From: Fimbriosthenelais zetlandica
Lineage: Eukaryota
Reading direction: 5' to 3'
Assembly (NCBI GenBank): GCA_977030845.1
Contig: OZ365112.1
Location: 18,352,001 to 18,416,000 of the forward strand
Length of the DNA: 64,000 nucleotides
In this document: positions 19,950-31,800 of the stretch, piece by piece
Layout: the number at the start of each line of letters is the position of its first letter
Numbering within the stretch: the stretch's first letter is position 1
Made by a program: the position numbers and the translations under genes
Notes under the pieces: generated by a model
Seen by the model: the letters and a program-made list of their open reading frames with translations, nothing else
Told to the model about the DNA's origin: nothing
Database searches by the model: none

Positions 19950-22165
19950 GTTGCTGTAATTCTACGTGAAAGCTTAAATTCGCAATTGTAAATTGGACAG
20001 GATATTGATTTTTATATTGTTCCCATGCCAAAATGGAATATGAATATGACCGCGAGTAGAACAGATTCTCCTCAAAAATTCTCCTATGCCCCATTCTCAT
20101 TGTTTCTAAGCAAACATTCCAAAATATTCAAATCTTTTTGCTACTGCTTTTACTCCAGATTAACCATGCATTCTGTGATTTGGTATAGATTGTATTTACA
20201 TCAAACCAATGTGGATAGAAAGTCTTCCTTTCACAGTCAGTAGTTGGTCCCTCATTTCGCCAAAATGGAATAGAGATAAAAGTAAGCAATACGGATCTAA
20301 TTTTATAGGTCGCATAACTTATTTTTCTGATCTATTTTGAGCTGAATTATCTGTTTCATTTACACAGTCTCATCCTTAATGTACGAAACATCATCAGCTG
20401 ATAATGAATTGCCTAGCTATGCATATCTTTGTAAAATGTCTGACATGAAATCGTCATAATGGTAGACAGTTGAAGGTTATGTATTGATTGACAGATTCTC
20501 ATGTTGATAAACTACAGACATCAGAGTCATTTTTGTGAGAAATTGTGTGCATCTGAGAGTACCTCGACTCAGGGGACCAGAGGCTTGAACAATACATGAC
20601 CTTAAATAAAGGATGGCCTTAAATGGTAACCGTGGACCAATCACTGGTAAGGCACAGGTAGACTTACCAGTTAGTACGAGATATAGGACTATACCTGGTA
20701 ATATTAGGACCATACTTACACTCTGTACCTGTCTATTGTGTGGTGAGAATACTCTTGACATGATCAGTTAGAGAGTTAGCTAAGATAAATTGTATTAGGT
20801 AGGTAAGTGAAAATGCTAACTGTGAAGAGAAGATCTCGCAATTTGTTATTAGATTTGAATCTAAAATTAGTCATAAATTAAAATGTTAAAAGTATTAGGT
20901 GAGTTGAGAGGTTAATGTACTAGATAATGATGAGAGGGTTACTACGAGGCACACGCATCTATATACCATGTAGGGTAGATATCATGAAGCCTATAAATCA
21001 TGTCTGTTGAGGTAAACGTACTAAACGGAAAAATTAATTTTGAATACATTGTATGTTGGAATATAGAAATCTCTTATTCTAGGTCACAAATATTTTTTGC
21101 CATTTCCATGGCTTCCAATCTATTCTATACGCCTATAGCTTAGATAGTCTGTGCTAACCTGTCCTTCCCTGCAAGAGAATTTTCAGTGGAATAAATTAGA
21201 GGAGATTAGCTTTGGTTGATTAATGCTAACCGACAACGTTATTGAAGTGTAAGGATAGTAATAATTGTTATTTTCTTGTGTATTGAGATCAAACTTGCCA
21301 CTCGGAGTGGTTCAGACCATGTGCTAGATGTCATTGTCCAGTTGTAGAACAAGCAATAAAATGTCATTAAATGTATTAATTCCTCACTTGCGTCATTGTA
21401 TTTATTTATTGAGATTGTCTGTAGGGTGTTGTAAAGATAACCAGATATGTTATCATCATAATTATGAGTAGCATGGATCCAAACTAAAGGTATCATATTA
21501 TATCAGTGATGATTGTCATTCTGTGATACTACCATTGGTAGGTCCAGTATCTAACATGACACCAGTCACAACAATGGTCCTATCACTGTCATGACACGCA
21601 TGACTGACATGAAGTCCTGCCCGTTTCTCATCTTCTGTCAGTCACAGTGCCTGCTAAGTCATGTCTGCCCTCTCTACTCCGCCACCAACAGATGACACTG
21701 CATCCTTCACTCTCTGTGCACACACAGCACTTTGTGTGGTATTGCAACAAGACTCCGCTATTCGTCAGAGAGGGAGATATAGGAAAATGAAAGCAATGTA
21801 CCATCAACAGATCACGGACATCTGGCATGTTTGCTGGCTTTTCCTCTGGTGTAAAAAAAGCCCAGATAAATATCTTTAGACGCTATGTAATCTGAGCCCA
21901 TACCCATTTCCCTAGTTTTCTGGTTCCAACATGTAGTGTGAAACATAGTTGACATGATACGCCCCCTCCCTCCTTCCTTCATCTAGCTCTCTCCCCTCCC
22001 TCATTTCCTCTCTCAACCCCCCTGAATTCAGTCCATCTTTGCAAGTGTTAATGAAATTCAAAGTATACCCAGACCCAGAAATGTCTATTCTAATATTTAG
22101 TCTGGGATTAGGCCTACTAGTATCTGAAAAGTGGAGATCGTAGCAGGCATACAGAATCTTTCAGG

Positions 22166-22250
22166 AAAAATAAGCCTTTCCCTAAAAAGGTTCGAACTCC
22201 CCATCTCTGACATCGTGTGCTAGCGCTCTAACCACTTGACCGACTGACAC
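22166..22250 (-). ncRNA. tRNA-derived Pol III element (SINE-head-like), diverged copy
   Basis: The minus strand carries GGTCAAGTGG (A box-like), AGTTCGAACC (B box-like) and a T5 run. Confidence 0.6.
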
Positions 22251-22444
22251 AGGAGTTTATGATCCCTATAGCCAAGGTCCGCTGTGGTAGATGCGTATGA
22301 TCCCCTGCATGGCCCAAGACTTGTTCCCAAACCATATGTAGGCCCTAGTTCACCGTTTCGCCGCTAGAAATCTCGGGTCACCATTGACACGGCAAGCTCT
22401 CTGAGACATCAGGTCAAGCTTTAGACCTTCCCCTTTCCAGTCCT

Positions 22445-22525
22445 GTGCGTCGTGGTGAAGTGGTTAGAGCGCTAACACATGGTGTCGAAGGTCGGGGTTT
22501 CGAACCCTGATCTTGGCTTATTTTT
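22445..22525 (+). ncRNA. tRNA-derived Pol III element, diverged copy
   Basis: TGGTGAAGTGG A box, GGTTTCGAACCC imperfect B box, T5. Confidence 0.6.
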
Positions 22526-22949
22526 ACTGAAAGAATCTTCTTGGCAAACAAGGAACGATCAGAGAGCGTCGAGAGTCAACTCCGCCTGGTGCCGCTTCGG
22601 TCGCCATTGTTGATGATCTCTGTATCTGGGATGACCAGATTCATGGGCCAGCAACATCATCGACCCCAAGCGGGACCAGGCAGAAATGACTCTCGGCGCT
22701 CTGATGCTACCTTGTTTGAGATCCATGTAGTTCATCATCCATGTTGACCTATCTGCAATGGCAGGTTCACAGGTCAAGAGAATAGGCCTACCCAAGCCAA
22801 CGTGCCACCAGTGCCCCTGCTAAGAAGATTCTAATGCTGGTATTCGGTTTGGACCCTGCATTGGCTAAATCATGATAAATAGTTCACCGTTCCGCCGCTA
22901 GGGCCCTTGTCGCTCAGACCTTGTTTGCCAATTAAGGAGATTCTTTCAG

Positions 22950-23035
22950 AAAAAATAAGCGTTCCCAAATCAGGGTTCGAACCGGCGACCTCTTACACAG
23001 TGTGCTAGCGCTCTAGCCACTTGACCACGAGGCAC
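22950..23035 (-). ncRNA. tRNA-derived Pol III element
   Basis: A box TGGTCAAGTGG, B box GGTTCGAACCC, T6 terminator; tRNA-length arms but poor acceptor and anticodon stems. Confidence 0.75.
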
Positions 23036-23939
23036 ATGACTGGGGTTGGGCGGTGTAAAACTTGGTCTGATGTCTCACAGAGCTTGCCGTCCCCTTCAAC
23101 GCTCCTCCTCCTCTACAAACCTGCCGCGCATGCCCACTGAAGCTCCTTGATCACTGAAGCGTTGAAAAAGTTGAAGCTATTTCGGGCCAAATTTCTCTCC
23201 AAGTTTACCTCCTCCCATGATCCTTTGCAGCTCGATTTCTAGAAAGTTGAATATCTCTGCAATTAAAGGCTCAAAAAATACAAAATAAACGGATTATTCT
23301 TAGTTGGAAGGTACTCTAAATGCTGACCATGTTTTTGAAGCGAAAAAATTCATTTAAAATTTCAGTTTTTGAAAATGAGCTCATTTTCACACATTAGCAT
23401 GGATCTCTATGGAGGGAGCAAGCCAGAGCGACAGTGGCGACCCGAGATTTCTAGCGGCGAAACGGTGAACTACCGAGCCGGTTTGGACCCTGCGTTGGCT
23501 AGATCAAGATAAATAGTTCACCGTTTCGCCGCTAGGGCCTCTGTCCCTCAGGCTTGCTCCATCCATAGAGATCAATGCCAATGTGGGAAAATGAGCTCAT
23601 TTTCAAAAACTGAAATTTTAAATCAATTTTCTCACTTCAAAAACATGGTCAGCATTTAGAGTACCTTCCAACTAAGAATAATCCGTTTATTTTGTATTTT
23701 TTGAGCCCTTAATTGCAGAGATATTCAACTTTCTAGAAATCGAGCTGCAAAGGATCATGGGAGGAGGTAAACTTGGAGAGAAATTTAGCCCGAAATAGCT
23801 TCAACTTTTTCAACGCTTCAGTGATCAAGGAGCTTCAGTGGGCATGCGCGGCAGGTTTGTAGAGGAGGAGGAGCGTTGAAGGGGACGGCAAGCTCTGTGA
23901 GACATCAGACCAAGTTTTACACCGCCCAACCCCAGTCAT

Positions 23940-24025
23940 GTGCCTTGTGGTCAAGTGGTTAGAGCGCTAGCACACTGTGTAAGAGGTCGCCGGTTCGAAC
24001 CCTGATTTGGGAAGGATTATTTTTT
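23940..24025 (+). ncRNA. tRNA-derived Pol III element
   Basis: A box 23948-23958, B box 23992-24002, T6 at 24020-24025. Confidence 0.75.
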
Positions 24026-24440
24026 CTGAACAATCTCCTTAATTGGCAAACAATGCCTGAGCGACAAGGGCCCTAGCGGCGGAACGGTGAACTATTTATC
24101 ATGATTTAGCCAACGCAGAGTCCAAACCGAATACCAGCATTATTATCCGAGTCGGCAAGGTAGTTCACCGTCAGAGCGTCGAGAGTCAACTCCGCCTGGT
24201 GCCGTTTCGGTCGCCATTGTTGATGATCTCTGTATCTGGGATTACCAGATTCATGGGCCACCACCATCAGCGACCCCAAGCGGCACCAGGCCGAACTGAC
24301 TGTCGCCACTCTGATGCTACCTTGTTTGAGATCATGTAGTTCATCATCCATGTTGGCCTATCTGCATTGGAATGTTCACCGGCCAAGAGAATACCCAAGC
24401 AAACATGCCACCACTGCCCCAGCCAATAAGATTCTTTCAG

Positions 24441-24526
24441 AAAAAATAAGCCTTCCCAAAACAGGGTTCGAACCGGCTACCTCTTACACAGTGTGCTAGC
24501 GCTCTAACCACTTGACCACAAGGCAC
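24441..24526 (-). ncRNA. tRNA-derived Pol III element
   Basis: Same A box, B box and T6 layout on the minus strand. Confidence 0.75.
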
Positions 24527-25430
24527 ATGACTGGGGATGGGCGGTGTAAAACTTGGTCTGATGTCTCACAGAGCTTGCCGTCCCCTTCAACGCTCCTCCT
24601 CCTCTACAAACCTGCCGCGCATGCCCACTGAAGCTCCTTGATCACTGAAGCGTTGAAAAAGTTGAAGCTATTTCGGGCCAAATTTCTCTCCAAGTTTACC
24701 TCCTCCCATGATCCTTTGCAGCTCGATTTCTAGAAAGTTGAATATCTCTGCAATTAAAGGCTCAAAAAATACAAAATAAACGGATTATTCTTAGTTGGAA
24801 GGTACTCTAAATGCTGACCATGTTTTTGAAGCGAAAAAATTCATTTAAAATTTCAGTTTTTGAAAATGAGCTCATTTTCACACATTAGCATGGATCTCTA
24901 TGGAGGGAGCAAGCCAGAGCGACAGTGGCGACCCGAGATTTCTAGCGGCGAAACGGTGAACTACCGAGCCGGTTTGGACCCTGCGTTGGCTAGATCAAGA
25001 TAAATAGTTCACCGTTTCGCCGCTAGGGCCTCTGTCCCTCAGGCTTGCTCCATCCATAGAGATCAATGCCAATGTGGGAAAATGAGCTCATTTTCAAAAA
25101 CTGAAATTTTAAATCAATTTTCTCACTTCAAAAACATGGTCAGCATTTAGAGTACCTTCCAACTAAGAATAATCCGTTTATTTTGTATTTTTTGAGCCCT
25201 TAATTGCAGAGATATTCAACTTTCTAGAAATCGAGCTGCAAAGGATCATGGGAGGAGGTAAACTTGGAGAGAAATTTAGCCCGAAATAGCTTCAACTTTT
25301 TCAACGCTTCAGTGATCAAGGAGCTTCAGTGGGCATGCGCGGCAGGTTTGTAGAGGAGGAGGAGCGTTGAAGGGGACGGCAAGCTCTGTGAGACATCAGA
25401 CCAAGTTTTACACCGCCCAACCCCAGTCAT

Positions 25431-25516
25431 GTGCCTCGTGGTCAAGTGGTTAGAGCGCTAGCACACTGTGTAAGAGGTCGCCGGTTCGAACCCTGATTTG
25501 GGAAGGATTATTTTTT
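25431..25516 (+). ncRNA. tRNA-derived Pol III element
   Basis: A box, B box, T6. Confidence 0.75.
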
Positions 25517-25932
25517 CTGAAACAATCTCCTTAATTGGCAAACAATGCCTGAGCGACAAGGGCCCTAGCGGCGGAACGGTGAACTATTTATCATGATTTA
25601 GCCAACGCAGGGTCCAAACCGAATACCAGCATTATTATCCGAGTCGGCAATGTAGTTCACCGTCAGAGCGTCGAGAGTCAACTCCGCCTGGTGCCGCTTC
25701 GGTCGCCATTGTTGATGATTTCTGTATCTGGGATTACGAGATTCATGGGCCACCACCATCAGCGACCCCAAGCGGCACCAGGCCGAACTGACTGTCGCCA
25801 CTCTGATGCTACCTTGTTTGAGATCATGTAGTTCATCATCCATGTTGACCTATCTGCATTGGAAGGTTCACCGTCCAAGAGCATACCCAAGCCAACATGC
25901 CAGCACTGCCCCAGCCAATAAGATTCTTTCAG

Positions 25933-26018
25933 AAAAAATAAGCCTTCCCAAAACAGGGTTCGAACCGGCTACCTCTTACACAGTGTGCTAGCGCTCTAAC
26001 CACTTGACCACGAGGCAC
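25933..26018 (-). ncRNA. tRNA-derived Pol III element
   Basis: A box, B box, T6 on the minus strand. Confidence 0.75.
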
Positions 26019-26933
26019 ATGACTGGGGATGTGCGGTGTAAAACTTGGTCTGATGTCTCACAGAGCTTGCCGTCCCCTTCAACGCTCCTCCTCCTCTACA
26101 AACCTGCCGCGCATGCCCACTGAAGCTCCTTGATCACTGAAGCGTTGAAAAAGTTGAAGCTATTTCGGGCCAAATTTCTCTCCAAGTTTACCTCCTCCCA
26201 TGATCCTTTGCAGCTCGATTTCTAGAAAGTTGAATATCTCTGCAATTAAGGGCTCAAAAAATACAAAATAAACGGATTATTCTTAATTGGAAGGTACTCT
26301 AAATGCTGACCATGTTTTTGAAGCGAGAAAATTGATTTAAAATTTCAGTTTTTGAAAATGAGCTCATTTTCCCACATTGGCATTGATCTCAATGGATGGA
26401 GCAAGCCTGAGGGACAGAGGCCCTAGCGGCGAAACGGTGAACTACTTATCATGATCTAGCCAACGCAGGGTCCAAACCGAATACCAGCCGGCTCGGTAGT
26501 TCACCGTTTCGCCGCTAGAAATCTCGGGTCGCCACTGTCGCCCTGGCTTGCTCCCTCCATAGAGATCCATGCTAATGTGTGAAAATGAGCTCATTTTCAA
26601 AAACTGAAATTTTAAATCAATTTTCTCGCTTCAAAAACATGGTCAGCATTTAGAGTACCTTCCAACTAAGAATAATCCGTTTATTTTGTATTTTTTGAGC
26701 CTTTAATTGCAGAGATATTCAACTTTCTAGAAATCGAGCTGCAAAGGATCATGGGAGGAGGTAAACTTGGAGAGAAATTTGGCCCGAAATAGCTTCAACT
26801 TTTTCAACGCTTCAGTGATCAAGGAGCTTCAGTGGGCATGCGCAGGAGGTTTGTAGAGGAAGAGGAGCGTTGAAGGGGACGGCAAGCTCTGTGAGACATC
26901 AGACCAAGTTTTACACCGCCCATCCCCAGTCAT

Positions 26934-27019
26934 GTGCCTCGTGGTCAAGTGGTTAGAGCGCTAGCACACTGTGTAAGAGGTCGCCGGTTCGAACCCGGAT
27001 TTGGGAAGGCTTATTTTTT
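26934..27019 (+). ncRNA. tRNA-derived Pol III element
   Basis: A box, B box (T-stem CCGG/CCGG intact in this copy), T6. Confidence 0.75.
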
Positions 27020-27435
27020 CTGAAAGAATCTCCTTAATTGGCAAACAATGCCTGAGCGACAAGGGCCCTAGCGGCGGAACGGTGAACTATTTATCATGAT
27101 TTAGCCAACGCAGGGTCCAAACCGAATACCAGCATTATTAGCCCAGTCGGCAAGGTAGTTCACCGTCAGAGCGTCGAGAGTCAACTCCGCCTGGTGCCGC
27201 TTCGGTCGCCATTGTTGATGATCTCTGTATCTGGGATTACGAGATTCATGGGCCACCACCATCAGCGACCCCAAGCGGCACCAGGCCGAACTGACTGGCG
27301 CCACTCTGATGCTACCTTGTTTGAGATCATGTAGTTCATCATCCATGTTGACCTATCTGCATTGGAAGGTTCACCGTCCAAGAGAATACCCAAGCCAACA
27401 TGCCACTACTGCCCCAGCCAATAAGATTCTTTCAG

Positions 27436-27521
27436 AAAAAATAAGCCTTCCCAAAACAGGGTTCGAACCGGCTACATCTTACACAGTGTGCTAGCGCTCT
27501 AACCACTTGACCACGAGGCAC
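27436..27521 (-). ncRNA. tRNA-derived Pol III element
   Basis: A box, B box, T6 on the minus strand. Confidence 0.75.
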
Positions 27522-28356
27522 ATGACTGGGGATGGCCGGTGTGAAACTTGGTCTGATGTCTGACCTTGATCACTGAAGCGTTGAAAAAGTTGAAGCTATT
27601 TCGGGCTCATTTTCTCTCCAACTTCATATCACGTGATCCTTTGCAGATCGATTTCTAAAAAGTTGAATATCTCTGCAATTAAGGGCTCAAAAAATACAAA
27701 ATAAACGGACCTTTCTTAGTTGGGAAGTACTCTAAATGGTGGCTAGGTTTTTGAAGCGGGAAAATTGATTTAAAATTTTAAGACTTTGAAAATGGGCCCA
27801 TTTTCCCACATTGGCATTGATCTCAATGGATGGAGCAAGCCTGAGGGACAGAGGCCCTAGCGGCGAAACGGTGAACTATTTATCATGATCTAGCCAACGC
27901 AGGGTCCAAACCGAATACCAGCCGGCTCGGTAGTTCACCGTTTCGCCGCTAGAAATCTCGGGTCGCCACTGTCGCCCTGGCTTGCTCCCTCCATAGAGAT
28001 TGTGAAAATGAGCTCATTTTCAAAAACTGAAATTTTAAATCAATTTTCTCGCTTCAAAAACATGGTCAGCATTTAGAGTACCTTCCAACTAAGAATAATC
28101 CGTTTATTTTTTATTTTTTGAGCCCTTAATTGCAGAGATATTCAACTTTCTAGAAATCGAGATGCAAAGGATCATGGGAGGAGGTAAACTTGGAGAGACA
28201 TTTAGCCCGAAATAGCTTCAACTTTTTCAACGCTTCAGTGATCAAGGAGCTTCAGTGGGCATGCGCGGCAGGTTTGTAGAGGAGGAGGAGCGTTGAAGGG
28301 GACGGCAAGCTCTGTGAGACATCAGACCAAGTTTTACACCGCCCAACCCCAGTCAT

Positions 28357-28442
28357 GTGCCTCGTGGTCAAGTGGCTAGAGCGCTAGCACACTGTGTAAG
28401 AGGTCGCCGGTTCGAACCCTGATTTGGGAACGCTTATTTTTT
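28357..28442 (+). ncRNA. tRNA-derived Pol III element
   Basis: A box, B box, T6; shares private variants with the copy at 22950-23035. Confidence 0.75.
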
Positions 28443-28745
28443 CTGAAAGAATCTCCTTAATTGGCAAACAAGGCCTGAGCGTCGAGAGTCAACTCCGCCT
28501 GGTGCCGCTACGGTCGCCATTGTTGATGATCTCTGTATCTGGGATGACCAGATTCACAGGTCACCAACATCAGCGACCCCCAAGCGGCACCAGGCGGAAC
28601 TGACTGTCGCCACTCTGATGCTACCTTGTTTGAGATCATGTAGTTCATCATCCATGTTGACCTATCTGCATTGGCAGGTTCACCGGCCAAGAGAATACCC
28701 AAGCCAACGTGCCACCAGTGCCCCTTCCAAGGAGATTCTTTCAGG

Positions 28746-28830
28746 AAAAATATGCCTTCCCAGATGAAGTTTCGAACTCGCCACCTCTCACTTTGAGCGC
28801 TAGCGCTTTAACCACTTGACTGCGACACAC
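28746..28830 (-). ncRNA. tRNA-derived Pol III element, diverged copy
   Basis: Minus-strand GTCAAGTGGTTAAAGCGC and AGTTCGAAAC, T5. Confidence 0.55.
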
Positions 28831-31800
28831 AGGACTGGAAAAACTCTCTCTTAATCCTGACTAGGATAGTTGGAGTTCCTCAGAATGAGATTTCCCGTGC
28901 GATAGGGATGTCCCCCATGCCCCGCCAGCACATGTATACTTCCCTCCCAAAATTAATTTAAAATCCCTATCGGTCCGCTATGTTAGTTGCGTATGATCCC
29001 CTGCATGAGCCAAGACTTGTTCCCGAGCCATATGTAGTTCACCGTTTCGCCGCTAGAAATCTCGGGTCACTACTGTCGCTCAGGCCTGCTCCTTCCATAG
29101 AGTACAATGCTAACCTGGAAAAATGACTCCATTTTCAAAATTTCAATTTTTAAATCAATTTTATTCATTCCAAAAGTATGTCCTAACATAGTTCAGCTCT
29201 CAACTAAGATTTATCAGATAAGATCGTAATTTTAGGCCCAGTAGTTTTCGAGAAATTAAAGAAATAAAAAAACCGTCATTTTTATCTACTACTTACAAAC
29301 GCTCGAGGCGCGCATAATTACGGCCACTAGAAGAACTAAGTCCCATTGAGTTAACGTTAGCCCCTTAGTTTCATATAATTATATTATCCAAGCTTAGATA
29401 TATATCCTGTGTTGCAGCGGCTCAATATATTGACTGTATTGTGCACATTTTCTGAATGTTCCACTGGATTTGCCGACTCGGGTATCTAGAACCCACCCTG
29501 AGCACGAACCGCGTCGGTGGACATCCACCCGGACATCCACTACACTACTGGCGCTGGCTGATGGCTTCCCTCGAGGAGTCGCGGCGGGGGTAGCTCCTTA
29601 GACATCGAACCTCCCAGTCCGTTCAGCTACCATAGCTGGAATAAGACATTACTCAATACTGGTTTTAATATAGGGCCTACAGACATAGAAAATATATAAC
29701 ATAGGCTATAGGGAATCAGACGCGACTAGCATAGGGAATCAGACCCGTCAACCATAGGTAATTAATAGGGAATCTTATAAATGCATGCCTCGGGCAATTC
29801 TGGGCAAAGCGGATGATTGTTTGTATATATATACGATCCAGAATTGTATGGATGTATTACATGGATTGACAGGGGGTTTGATTTTATAATACTTGTATTT
29901 GCAAGTACACAGAATGATCTATCAGGAAGCTGAAGATTGAATGTGACGTACATGTATTCTTTCCATTTTGCAACTAACAACAAAGACTTTCTTTGTTACT
30001 TTTGAACAAACAAAAAGGTCGAGTCATCTCCATTTGTTGTAAATATGTTTGAAATGAAGGCAAACAAAATTGCGTCGCGAACTTTAGGCTGAGGTGTGTT
30101 ATCTTTGTGTTGATGGAGGTTGCGTTATTTTGTCGTGCCTTCACAGTAAAAGCATACTGTTTCCATTTAGTCGTTTGATCAGCCTATTGCTGTTTGACAA
30201 TATTCATTTCCTAAGGGTATTGGGAGGAAAGACACAAAAGGGCAACAGTTTGGGACTGGTACTCTTGTGATGGATGGGAAGGGGAGTGGGAGATTCTCAA
30301 AGCTTCCTCATAATGTTGATCAATCAAAGAGTGGCTATTTCCTTCTGTAGTCTCGTCATCTTGGAAATATGAACGTCGTGGAGTCCCGGGCCACCGTTTA
30401 AAGATGCGATATTCCATACAGGATTTAGCATATCAGGATAGCCAGCCCATCAGGTGGTCCTAAGCCAGGGATATATCTGTCTCCAACATGAGAGAACAGA
30501 CATTTGATAAAAGCCCGGCCCTCTTTGCACGTTCCAACCATTAATGGGCGCCACTTGAAACACAATAGGCCTGCTGTCTTTTTCCTCGCTCCAAGACAAA
30601 GCTTTAAAACTATTGAACTATCGAGCAAAGAAAAACAGTATGTATCATCTTGAATCCAAATCAAACAAGTCAGACCCATGCCCATCACCAGTATAACGTC
30701 TGCTGGCTGCTTTTTTGATATATCAAAGTACGTGTTGGATTGAGGGAAGGAGATCCTCCTGTATTTCCCGTCATTGTCTTGGGGCGCGTTTCAGCCGTCC
30801 CCTATAAGCCAACCGCTCTGGCTCTAACAACGCCAAACGGGCAGGAACTTTTCATCTCACATCCGACTGGTGTTTTAAGCGGGAAGATTCAGATCAATGG
30901 AAAAAACAGAGAGTGGAAAGCTTCTCACGCCGACCACATCCCAACCAGTGGATTGATTGCACCAAACAATATCAGTTTACAGGGCCAGAACGCGCTCCCT
31001 CCCACCAACGTCACGCGCCACCATAGGAACAAGTTGAAGTGTCGTCTGGAGATTCTCTCACCAAACCTTGAAGTTTGCTGAATTCCCACCTCTTTGCACA
31101 ACATCAAAAGCGTCGCCCTTACTGAGGTCAATTTCTTGATAGAGTTTTCGATCAATGATAGCCTAATACAATCCTATAATTCTAATAAATGGAAAATGTC
31201 ATGACAATGTTTTAGGGGAAGGGGCACAGAATGGTATCTGGTAAATCCTGTGGAATCTGAAATCGTTGAGAAAGTATTGATTGAATGGAAATTAATACAA
31301 ACGGAAGTAAAATATATATTTTTCTCCGTAAGGGAAAGAGCATAGTGTATTTTTAAGACAAAGGGCGACAGAAGTTCCTCGCCATAATTGGACAGCACTT
31401 CAATGTCGATATCTTGTATTCTAATGTAAGTCGATAACTCCGACAAAAGCACTTTCCTTTCCGACGATTAATCCCTAACATCCGGGGATCATTATTGATG
31501 AAAGTAAATGGAGTTGACACAGTCGAGAGAGAGCATAGTATGGCGCGCCTTTGTGTAATAAATTGATTACTTTTCATCTGCTTATTTTTTAGGCATGTTA
31601 TTCGGGATAGCTGCTTTTCAGACAAGGCAAGGGATGTGACTTTGCATATGAGAGGAGGAGATGGTATCGAACAATCAAGAAATGTTGTAATGGATGCAGG
31701 CAAATCAATTATGAACAATGTTTGAAATAGTGAGTAATAAAAGAGCAATTATTTTTGCGGTGCAATATTTTTCAGCATTCTCATAATATTGTAAATTGGT

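What the first reader, a model, noticed from the sequence alone, without database searches (positions are those of the whole stretch)
23380..28010. Palindrome centres are flipped: units 1-2 versus units 3-4
The asymmetric central segment (about 23380-23590 and 24870-25080) appears as its reverse complement in units 3 and 4 (about 26360-26590 and 27800-28010, with about 10 extra nt, gaataccagc). The spacers between palindromes keep one orientation throughout. This is the footprint of crossover between inverted arms (flip-flop inversion), frozen in both states within one array, and it could still be switching somatically or between alleles.
Basis: seen in the sequence. Interest (0 to 1): 0.7.

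Follow-up and report, generated by a model that had tools for sequence, protein, structure and literature searches.

The report
Flipped centres in a palindrome array
In a four-unit tandem array of 1.1-kb DNA palindromes built from transposon pieces, the middle of units 1-2 really is the mirror-flipped version of units 3-4; this is the ordinary, already known outcome of recombination between the two arms of a palindrome, and nothing shows that it is still switching.

Summary
Observation confirmed. Window 22.8-28.8 kb holds four tandem units (period 1491/1492/1503/1423 nt). Each is a ~1.1-kb palindrome (arms ~494 nt, 96.4-96.8% alike in units 1-3) plus a ~400-nt spacer that always points the same way. 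The centre of units 1-2 is the reverse complement of units 3-4, apart from an 11-nt indel that is a deletion private to units 1-2.

- **Size of the flip:** arm variants that travel with the centre reach 220 nt into each arm, and variants near the outer ends stay on their side. The inverted tract is therefore 442 to about 1000 nt, with exchange points inside the arms. This points to homology-driven exchange, not a site-specific switch.
- **Spread:** units 1 and 2 are identical over 899 nt while their spacers differ, so unit-to-unit conversion probably spread the flipped core.
- **Elsewhere in the genome:** the asymmetric centre occurs only 14 times, in five paralogous arrays within 2.1 Mb of one chromosome. 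Both states occur. A tree needs at least two flips (AU p=0.013).
- **Dispersed copies:** one of eight orientable copies of the parent transposon also has a reversed loop.
- **Not tested:** ongoing, allelic or somatic switching, because no sequencing run was listed.

An earlier first-reader note (s1-207675, unchecked) reports a flipped palindrome spacer elsewhere in this genome. This is a small new case of a known mechanism.

The parts
22827..28838 (.). Whole tandem array: four palindrome-plus-spacer units with partial flanking modules. Degenerate remnants reach 22144-29260.
   Evidence: Direct-repeat families with spacing 1491/1492/1503/1423 and 25+ inverted pairs; module map.
22945..24030 (.). 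Unit 1 palindrome: left arm 22945-23438, centre 23439-23536 (98 nt, order A end then B end), right arm 23537-24030.
   Evidence: Inverted pair I8, 494 nt, 97%; arm-to-arm 96.8%; centre orientation.
24436..25521 (.). Unit 2 palindrome: left arm 24436-24929, centre 24930-25027 (order A then B), right arm 25028-25521.
   Evidence: Inverted pair I7; arm-to-arm 96.6%; centre 100% identical to unit 1.
25928..27024 (.). Unit 3 palindrome: left arm 25928-26421, centre 26422-26530 (109 nt, order B then A, i.e. flipped), right arm 26531-27024.
   Evidence: Inverted pair I6, 109 nt between the arms; centre matches unit 1 on the - strand at 92%; alignment.
27431..28447 (.). Unit 4 palindrome: left arm 27431-27855 (diverged, with a 66-nt deletion), centre about 27856-27964 (order B then A), right arm 27965-28447 (11-nt deletion near 28000).
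   Evidence: arm-to-arm 90.5%.
23267..23708 (.). Minimal inverted tract in unit 1. The same tract is 24758-25199 in unit 2, 26250-26702 in unit 3 and about 27683-28125 in unit 4. The exchange points lie between 22988-23266 and 23709-23987.
   Evidence: Variable sites classed as 'follows the centre' or 'follows the side'.
26479..26489 (+). 11-nt stretch gaataccagcc, present in units 3 and 4 (unit 4: about 27913-27923) and in all other centres of the genome, but deleted in units 1-2.
   Evidence: centre lengths of 98 against 109 nt.
23047..23945 (.). 899-nt tract identical between unit 1 and unit 2 (= 24538-25436). It covers the flipped core and is flanked by sequence that differs by 3-7%.
   Evidence: In-register mismatch list; segment identities.
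24173..24420 (+). Spacer core S. Other copies are at 22563-22817, 25665-25912, 27168-27415 and 28477-28724, all on the + strand. Its first ~142 nt are self-complementary.
   Evidence: a hairpin-type match to RF04110 far below its threshold.
24040..24172 (+). Module M in the spacer. Other copies are at 25532-25664 and 27035-27167 on +, and 22832-22934 on -. It is absent after unit 4. It is an armless copy of the palindrome centre in B-to-A order, an insertion of about 119 nt bounded by GAGCG.
23925..24011 (+). tRNA-like module T at the outer end of each arm, followed by a T run. Copies on + at 22430, 25416, 26919 and 28342; inverted copies at 22964, 24455, 25947 and 27450.
   Evidence: Family D9. 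Neither ARAGORN nor Rfam calls it a tRNA, so the tRNA likeness rests only on box A- and box B-like motifs that I read in the sequence.

Best explanation
The array is a transposon-derived tandem repeat in which every unit carries a ~1.1-kb palindrome. In an ancestor of units 1-2, a homology-driven exchange between the two arms of one palindrome inverted the middle 442 to about 1000 nt. The likeliest mechanism is an intrachromatid crossover within the arms, 220-500 nt from the centre. The flipped core then lost 11 nt from its loop and was copied onto the neighbouring unit by unit-to-unit gene conversion or unequal exchange. The other orientation (units 3-4) is probably the older one. The same kind of flip happened at least once more in a paralogous array. 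The states now look like fixed fossils of rare events, a by-product of the recombination that keeps arms and units alike, with no function of their own. Shown: the flip, its extent, the shared origin of all centres, both states in paralogous arrays, and the 899-nt identity. Inferred: crossover as the mechanism, the polarity, and the absence of current switching.
For: - **Flip:** the centres are exact reverse complements apart from the indel, and they fall on opposite strands in the genome search.
- **Extent:** 12 arm and centre sites follow the centre out to 23267/23708, while sites at and beyond 22987/23988 follow the side. The arms stay in register with no junction indel.
- **Substrate:** the arms are 96.4-96.8% alike over ~494 nt.
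- **Single origin:** the full A-to-B centre occurs only 14 times, all in five arrays on contig C13, and all share the derived A/B asymmetry. Dispersed copies have A-type ends on both arms.
- **Orientation relative to S:** window same, same, opposite, opposite; array at 18.90 Mb opposite three times; 20.16 Mb opposite, opposite, same; 20.45 Mb opposite twice.
- **Repeated flips:** the tree of inner tracts puts each 'same' unit next to an 'opposite' one. It needs 2 changes, and the AU test rejects a single clade with p=0.013.
- **Spread:** units 1 and 2 are identical over 899 nt against 11 differences in 293 nt of spacer.
- **Precedent:** intrachromatid NAHR between palindrome arms is known to invert the spacer (PMC8327919). 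Conversion far outnumbers inversion in human Y palindrome P6 (PMC3723533).
Against: - No reads could be laid, so the assembly's orientation per unit has not been checked independently.
- The exchange points are only bracketed. The sites between the brackets (columns 216-388) do not fit one clean reciprocal crossover and need extra conversions.
- Polarity rests on majority rule among paralogous units that evolve in concert.
- Conversion between units could mimic independent flips in the tree. The clade tested was also named after the tree had been seen.
- Sequence alone cannot tell a crossover from a replication template switch.
Confidence: 0.7

Rival explanations
1. Replication template switching between the inverted arms, independent of recombination and helped by hairpin or cruciform formation, inverted the core rather than a meiotic or mitotic crossover.
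For: A single strand of the core folds into a near-perfect hairpin (-200.6 kcal/mol, z -40). Deletions pile up at the centre of symmetry: the loop shrinks from the 18.90 Mb array, to window units 3-4, to units 1-2. That is typical of hairpin-prone DNA. The product would be the same as that of a crossover.
Against: Nothing in the sequence separates it from a crossover. The long conversion tracts (899 nt) show that ordinary homologous exchange does act here.
Confidence: 0.15
2. The centres still toggle, either as an inversion polymorphism between alleles or individuals or as somatic mosaicism. The assembly would then show one snapshot.
For: The substrate is adequate (494-nt arms about 97% alike). 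Flips recurred in the family. Spacer inversion polymorphisms are common in primate X palindromes (PMC8327919).
Against: Each state has private substitutions and an indel (1.8% over 442 nt), so the two states in the window are not recent interconversions of each other. No recombinase-like ORF lies within 10 kb. Arms of 0.5 kb should recombine far more rarely than palindrome arms of many kilobases; this comparison is from general knowledge. No reads were available.
Confidence: 0.1
3. Assembly artefact: the assembler oriented the centre of some units wrongly.
For: Palindromes and tandem repeats are classic trouble spots, and I could not check any reads.
Against: The flipped copies are not the same letters turned round. 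They differ by 8 substitutions and an 11-nt indel, and arm variants 220 nt away flip with them. Both states recur in a paralogous array 1.8 Mb away with its own substitutions. The genome is 447 Mb in 79 contigs, which I take to imply reads much longer than a 1.5-kb unit. The window contains no N.
Confidence: 0.05

Closest known systems
Spacer inversion in large sex-chromosome palindromes (primate X palindromes, human Y P6, IR3) by intrachromatid NAHR between the arms
   Same: Two highly similar inverted arms surround an asymmetric spacer that is found in both orientations. The exchange points lie inside the arms, so paralogous variants swap arms. Gene conversion is the commoner outcome, and rearrangements and deletions concentrate at the centre of symmetry (PMC8327919; PMC3723533; here).
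   Different: The scale is 20 to 1000 times smaller (0.5-kb arms, about 100-nt spacer). The locus is non-coding and transposon-derived. The palindromes are themselves tandemly repeated, so both states sit side by side in one array and can spread by unit-to-unit conversion. No population data exist.
Satellite or tandem arrays born from foldback and other DNA transposons (e.g. Tetris in Drosophila virilis, PMC4079207; reviews PMC12628747 and PMC9659126, listed; I saw only their titles and abstract openings)
   Same: A dispersed non-coding element with an internal palindrome (at least about 1200 first-look candidates) supplied the building block of local tandem arrays.
   Different: Here the arrays are short (2-4 units) and confined to 2.1 Mb of one chromosome. 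They are composites that also hold a tRNA-like module and a hairpin spacer. In the dispersed element the palindrome is internal, not terminal.
Flip-flop isomerisation of replicons with inverted repeats (yeast 2-micron plasmid, chloroplast inverted repeats, herpesvirus segments); named from general knowledge, not tested here
   Same: Recombination between inverted repeats inverts the segment between them and gives two isomers.
   Different: Those systems interconvert continually, and 2-micron uses a dedicated recombinase at defined sites. Here there is no recombinase nearby, the exchange points lie anywhere within a ~280-nt stretch of each arm, and the states appear fixed.

Membership tests
Palindrome whose spacer is inverted by arm-to-arm homologous exchange (NAHR type) | Two inverted arms of high identity | tested here: met
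   Arms of about 494 nt, 96.4-96.8% alike in units 1-3 and 90.5% in unit 4.
Palindrome whose spacer is inverted by arm-to-arm homologous exchange (NAHR type) | An asymmetric centre present in both orientations relative to outside markers | tested here: met
   Centres are on strands + + - - while all spacers are +.
Palindrome whose spacer is inverted by arm-to-arm homologous exchange (NAHR type) | Exchange points inside the arms: inner arm variants swap sides, outer ones do not | tested here: met
   Flipped sites reach 23267/23708; fixed sites start at 22987/23988 and continue outwards.
Palindrome whose spacer is inverted by arm-to-arm homologous exchange (NAHR type) | Orientation polymorphic among individuals or recurrent in a phylogeny | tested here: inconclusive
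   At least two changes on the tree of paralogous units, AU p=0.013, but conversion between units could mimic this. No population or read data.
Site-specific invertible DNA switch (Hin/Gin, FLP type) | A dedicated recombinase gene at or near the locus | tested here: not met
   No ORF of 130 aa or more within 8 kb of the array. Seven short ORFs within 8 kb of the array, and one 18 kb upstream, have no Pfam family. A recombinase encoded elsewhere is not excluded.
Site-specific invertible DNA switch (Hin/Gin, FLP type) | Exchange at short fixed sites that border the invertible segment | tested here: not met
   The exchange lies 220-500 nt out in the arms, not at the centre's borders.
Foldback transposon | Long terminal inverted repeats that form the ends of a mobile, dispersed element with target-site duplications | tested here: inconclusive
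   The dispersed family is real (1310 and 1222 first-look candidates). However, its palindrome is internal to an element of about 1.6 kb with about 820 nt of unique sequence on one side. I did not determine its ends or target duplications.
Parvovirus-type flip/flop terminal hairpin | A hairpin at the end of a linear replicon, with both orientations made at each replication round in roughly equal amounts | tested here: not met
   The palindromes are internal to a chromosome. Among dispersed copies 7 of 8 share one loop orientation.

The most novel reading that the evidence does not exclude
Kilobase palindromes with arms of only 0.5 kb still toggle in the germ line or soma of this animal. Orientation would then differ between alleles, individuals or tissues unit by unit, and flipped cores would spread along the array by conversion. 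That would give a compact natural reporter of intrachromatid exchange against conversion in an invertebrate.
Probability: 0.1. Interest if true: 0.5.

Novelty: new member of a known kind. Interest (0 to 1): 0.27.

Why it matters
The locus shows, within one short stretch, the three outcomes expected of recombination in palindromes:
- arm-to-arm homogenisation;
- rare inversion of the core;
- unit-to-unit spread of the inverted core.

It also shows loop erosion at the centre of symmetry, and all at a scale small enough for single long reads or PCR. That makes it a handy test locus, but it adds no new principle. For annotation, it warns that centre orientation in such arrays is not a reliable marker of unit ancestry.

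Tried and rejected
- **Reads:** The look-up of sequencing runs listed no run (its single use is spent). Read laying therefore could not be used, and neither mis-assembly nor switching could be tested directly.
- **RNA families:** ARAGORN and Rfam at the gathering threshold found nothing in the window. Rfam by E-value over 22.0-29.4 kb gave only a hairpin-type match of the spacer to a plant miRNA family, far below its threshold (38.9 against 110 bits). I take that as a generic hairpin resemblance. The T module is not called a tRNA by any tool.
- **Tandem Repeats Finder:** it reported nothing because the period exceeds its 500-nt limit.
- **Independent assembly of palindromes from A-type and B-type monomers in either order:** rejected. 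All 14 centres are A-B heterotypic and share the same derived loop.
- **Site-specific switch:** rejected, because the exchange points lie in the arms and no recombinase is nearby.
- **Wider census of loop orientation in dispersed copies:** The census rests on the eight copies already fetched.
- **Exact crossover mapping:** not possible. Sites between alignment columns 216 and 388 are uninformative or conflicting.
- **Transposon class:** I did not classify the parent element by its ends or target duplications, and I did not identify the species.
Full report
**1. What is there.** The window is G000:C13:18352001-18416000 of a 447-Mb, 79-contig animal genome.

Between about 22.8 and 28.8 kb lie four tandem units with start-to-start spacings of 1491, 1492, 1503 and 1423 nt. 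Tandem Repeats Finder misses them because its longest period is 500 nt.

My module map reads each unit as T(-), BODY(-), centre, BODY(+), T(+), M, S:
- T is an 87-nt module with box A- and box B-like motifs followed by a T run. No tool calls it a tRNA.
- BODY is 388 nt.
- M is 133 nt.
- S is a 248-nt spacer core whose first ~142 nt are self-complementary.

T plus BODY form arms of about 494 nt that are 96.4-96.8% alike within units 1-3 and 90.5% alike in unit 4. All five S copies are on the + strand.

**2. The observation.**
- With units 3 and 4 reverse-complemented, the four centres align almost perfectly. Without that step they align only through the palindromic parts.
- The genome search with the 176-nt centre of unit 1 (23400-23575) hits units 1 and 2 on the + strand at 100% and units 3 and 4 on the - strand at 92%, with E 6.5e-73 and 1.3e-72. 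Chance is not an issue.
- The indel is 11 nt: the centre is 98 nt between the arms in units 1-2 and 109 nt in units 3-4. All 12 other centres in the genome carry those letters, so it is a deletion private to units 1-2.

**3. Anatomy of the centre.**
- The alignment of the eight arms shows that the centre is made of two diverged versions of one arm end. Version A carries 11 extra nt and stops just after GGTGAACTA. Version B lacks those 11 nt and runs on for about 40 nt.
- Folded as single-stranded DNA, the core is a near-perfect hairpin (-200.6 kcal/mol, z -40). The arms pair through the shared 22-nt motif and leave an 11-nt bulge and a loop of about 41 nt.
- In units 1-2 the left arm ends in A and the right arm in B. 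In units 3-4 it is the reverse.

**4. How much is flipped.**
- I classed every variable column of the eight-arm alignment. Twelve sites follow the centre, meaning that L1=L2=R3 differs from R1=R2=L3.
- The outermost such site is at 23267 (left) and 23708 (right) in unit 1, equal to 26250 and 26702 in unit 3.
- Sites at 22987/23988 and further out follow the side (L2=L3 differs from R2=R3).
- The inverted tract is therefore at least 442 nt and at most about 1000 nt, and the exchange points lie inside the arms, 220-500 nt from the centre.
- The arms remain in register with no junction scar. This is what a homology-driven exchange leaves. It is not what a site-specific inversion at the centre's borders, or end joining, would leave.
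- The sites between the two brackets do not fit one clean reciprocal crossover, so additional conversions must be assumed.

**5. Relations among units.**
- Units 1 and 2 are identical over 899 nt (23047-23945 = 24538-25436). Their spacers differ at 11 of 293 positions, and the outer left arm differs at 6 of 86.
- A simple recent duplication of a 1491-nt unit would make the whole unit identical. A recent unit-to-unit conversion or copy event that carried the flipped core fits better.
- The inner tract of units 1-2 differs from that of unit 3 by 8 substitutions and the indel (98.2%). That is about the same as the divergence of their spacers (97.0-97.8%). The two states are therefore not fresh interconversions of each other.

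**6. The family in the genome.**
- The arm is a genome-wide repeat, with 1310 first-look candidates. Dispersed copies are 80-83% identical to it.
- Those copies belong to a non-coding element of about 1.6 kb with about 820 nt of unique sequence, a short arm, a centre and a long arm. Its two arms are only about 75-79% alike, and both end in the A-type sequence plus an extension.
- The A/B asymmetry is therefore derived. It is found only in 14 centres, all in five arrays on C13, at 18.375-18.380 (this window), 18.902-18.905, 19.165-19.168, 20.165-20.168 and 20.446-20.448 Mb. All 14 share the same loop backbone. They descend from one founder palindrome, which rules out independent assembly in two orders.
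- Only the best 40 candidates of each search were scored, so these counts are lower bounds.

**7. Orientation states elsewhere.** The orientation of the A-to-B centre relative to S is as follows.

| Array | States |
|---|---|
| This window | same, same, opposite, opposite |
| 18.90 Mb | opposite, opposite, opposite |
| 20.16 Mb | opposite, opposite, same |
| 20.45 Mb | opposite, opposite |
| 19.17 Mb | the two S copies that flank one palindrome are in opposite orientation to each other |

- S is also bracketed by inverted arms, so the 19.17-Mb arrangement shows that S can flip as well.
- 'Opposite', the state of units 3-4, is the majority state.
- It is also the orientation of M, an armless copy of the centre fixed in the spacer with a longer loop. 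I therefore take units 1-2 to be the flipped ones, with moderate confidence.

**8. Number of flips.**
- I built a maximum-likelihood tree of the inner tracts (centre plus or minus 290 nt, all oriented A to B). Window units 1 and 2 ('same') come out as sister to unit 3 ('opposite') with support 99/100.
- The 'same' unit of the 20.16-Mb array sits with the 19.17-Mb unit (100/99) and then with a 20.45-Mb 'opposite' unit (97/98).
- For the count and the test I rebuilt the tree without the long-branched third unit of the 18.90-Mb array. The fewest state changes is then two, and an AU test rejects a single clade of 'same' units (p=0.013).
- Two caveats apply. I named that group after seeing the tree, and conversion between units of opposite state could move sequence without moving orientation.

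**9. Dispersed copies as a control.**
- Eight copies can be oriented by their unique flank. Seven carry the loop in one orientation, and one (L058:9650-9920) has it reversed.
- Flips are therefore not confined to the arrays, but they are rare. That speaks against a flip/flop process that makes both forms at every replication.
- The sample is small, and I could not enlarge it.

**10. Mechanism and rivals.**
- The best reading is intrachromatid homologous exchange between the arms, followed by loop erosion and spread by conversion. It matches what is described for much larger palindromes. NAHR within one chromatid inverts the spacer, about half of orientable primate X-palindrome spacers differ in orientation between species, and rearrangements concentrate at the centre of symmetry (PMC8327919). 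In human Y palindrome P6 there were 56 conversions against 3 inversions, at about 1.4-1.7e-5 inversions per generation (PMC3723533).
- A replication template switch would give the same product, and the sequence cannot exclude it.
- A dedicated switch is unlikely. No ORF of 130 aa or more lies within 8 kb of the array, and the eight short ORFs I scanned match no Pfam family.
- An assembly artefact is unlikely because the flipped copies carry their own substitutions and the state recurs in a paralogous array. It remains formally untested.

**11. What could not be done.**
- No public run was listed for this stretch, so neither the assembly's orientation nor allelic or somatic switching could be examined.
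- I did not classify the parent transposon by its ends and target duplications, and I did not identify the species.

**12. Verdict.**
- The historic-inversion reading is supported, and the 'still switching' reading is open but unsupported.
- This is a small, clean instance of a well-known process in a new setting. An earlier first-reader note (s1-207675, unchecked) reports a similar flipped spacer on another chromosome of this genome.

Noticed in passing
window 24040-24172, 25532-25664, 27035-27167 (+); 22832-22934 (-): Module M in the spacer is an armless copy of the palindrome centre: the B end, a loop 14 nt longer than in the palindromes, and the first ~12 nt of the A end. It is an insertion of about 119 nt bounded by a GAGCG direct repeat, and it is absent from the T-S junctions at 22503-22590 and 28429-28505.
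   Followed up: partly
window 23047-23945 and 24538-25436: Units 1 and 2 are letter-identical over 899 nt, while their flanks differ by 3-7%. This looks like a recent conversion tract between direct repeats.
   Followed up: yes
window 22276-22386 and 28972-29102: The array is bracketed by direct copies of a 66-nt sequence (89% alike), each followed by an inverted A-type arm end. Either the array grew inside, or by unequal exchange of, an older copy of the dispersed element.
   Followed up: no
window 28473-28619 (and the other S copies): The spacer core folds as a hairpin of about 146 nt. It gives a sub-threshold match to plant miRNA family RF04110 on both strands (38.9 and 33.3 bits against a gathering score of 110). 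I take this as a generic MITE-like hairpin resemblance.
   Followed up: partly
L035+L036 (G000:C13:19159001-19176000), about 19167465-19169213: In this paralogous array the two S spacers that flank one palindrome are in opposite orientation. The segment between inverted arms that holds S can therefore flip as well.
   Followed up: partly
L058:9650-9920 (G000:C13:15375650-15375920): One dispersed copy of the ~1.6-kb parent element has its palindrome loop reversed relative to the element's unique flank. Seven other orientable copies share the usual orientation.
   Followed up: partly
window 27537-27564 (left arm of unit 4); the same deletion in arrays at 18.90, 20.16 and 20.45 Mb: A 66-nt deletion (BODY positions 295-360) marks a unit subtype shared by four of the five arrays. 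The arrays are therefore paralogous copies of an ancestral array that already had two unit types.
   Followed up: partly
L038:951-2554 (G000:C13:2549451-2551054) and many other places: This is a non-coding dispersed repeat of about 1.6 kb with an internal 520-nt palindrome and an internal ~190-nt direct repeat, with more than 1200 first-look candidates in the genome. I did not determine its class, ends or target duplication.
   Followed up: partly
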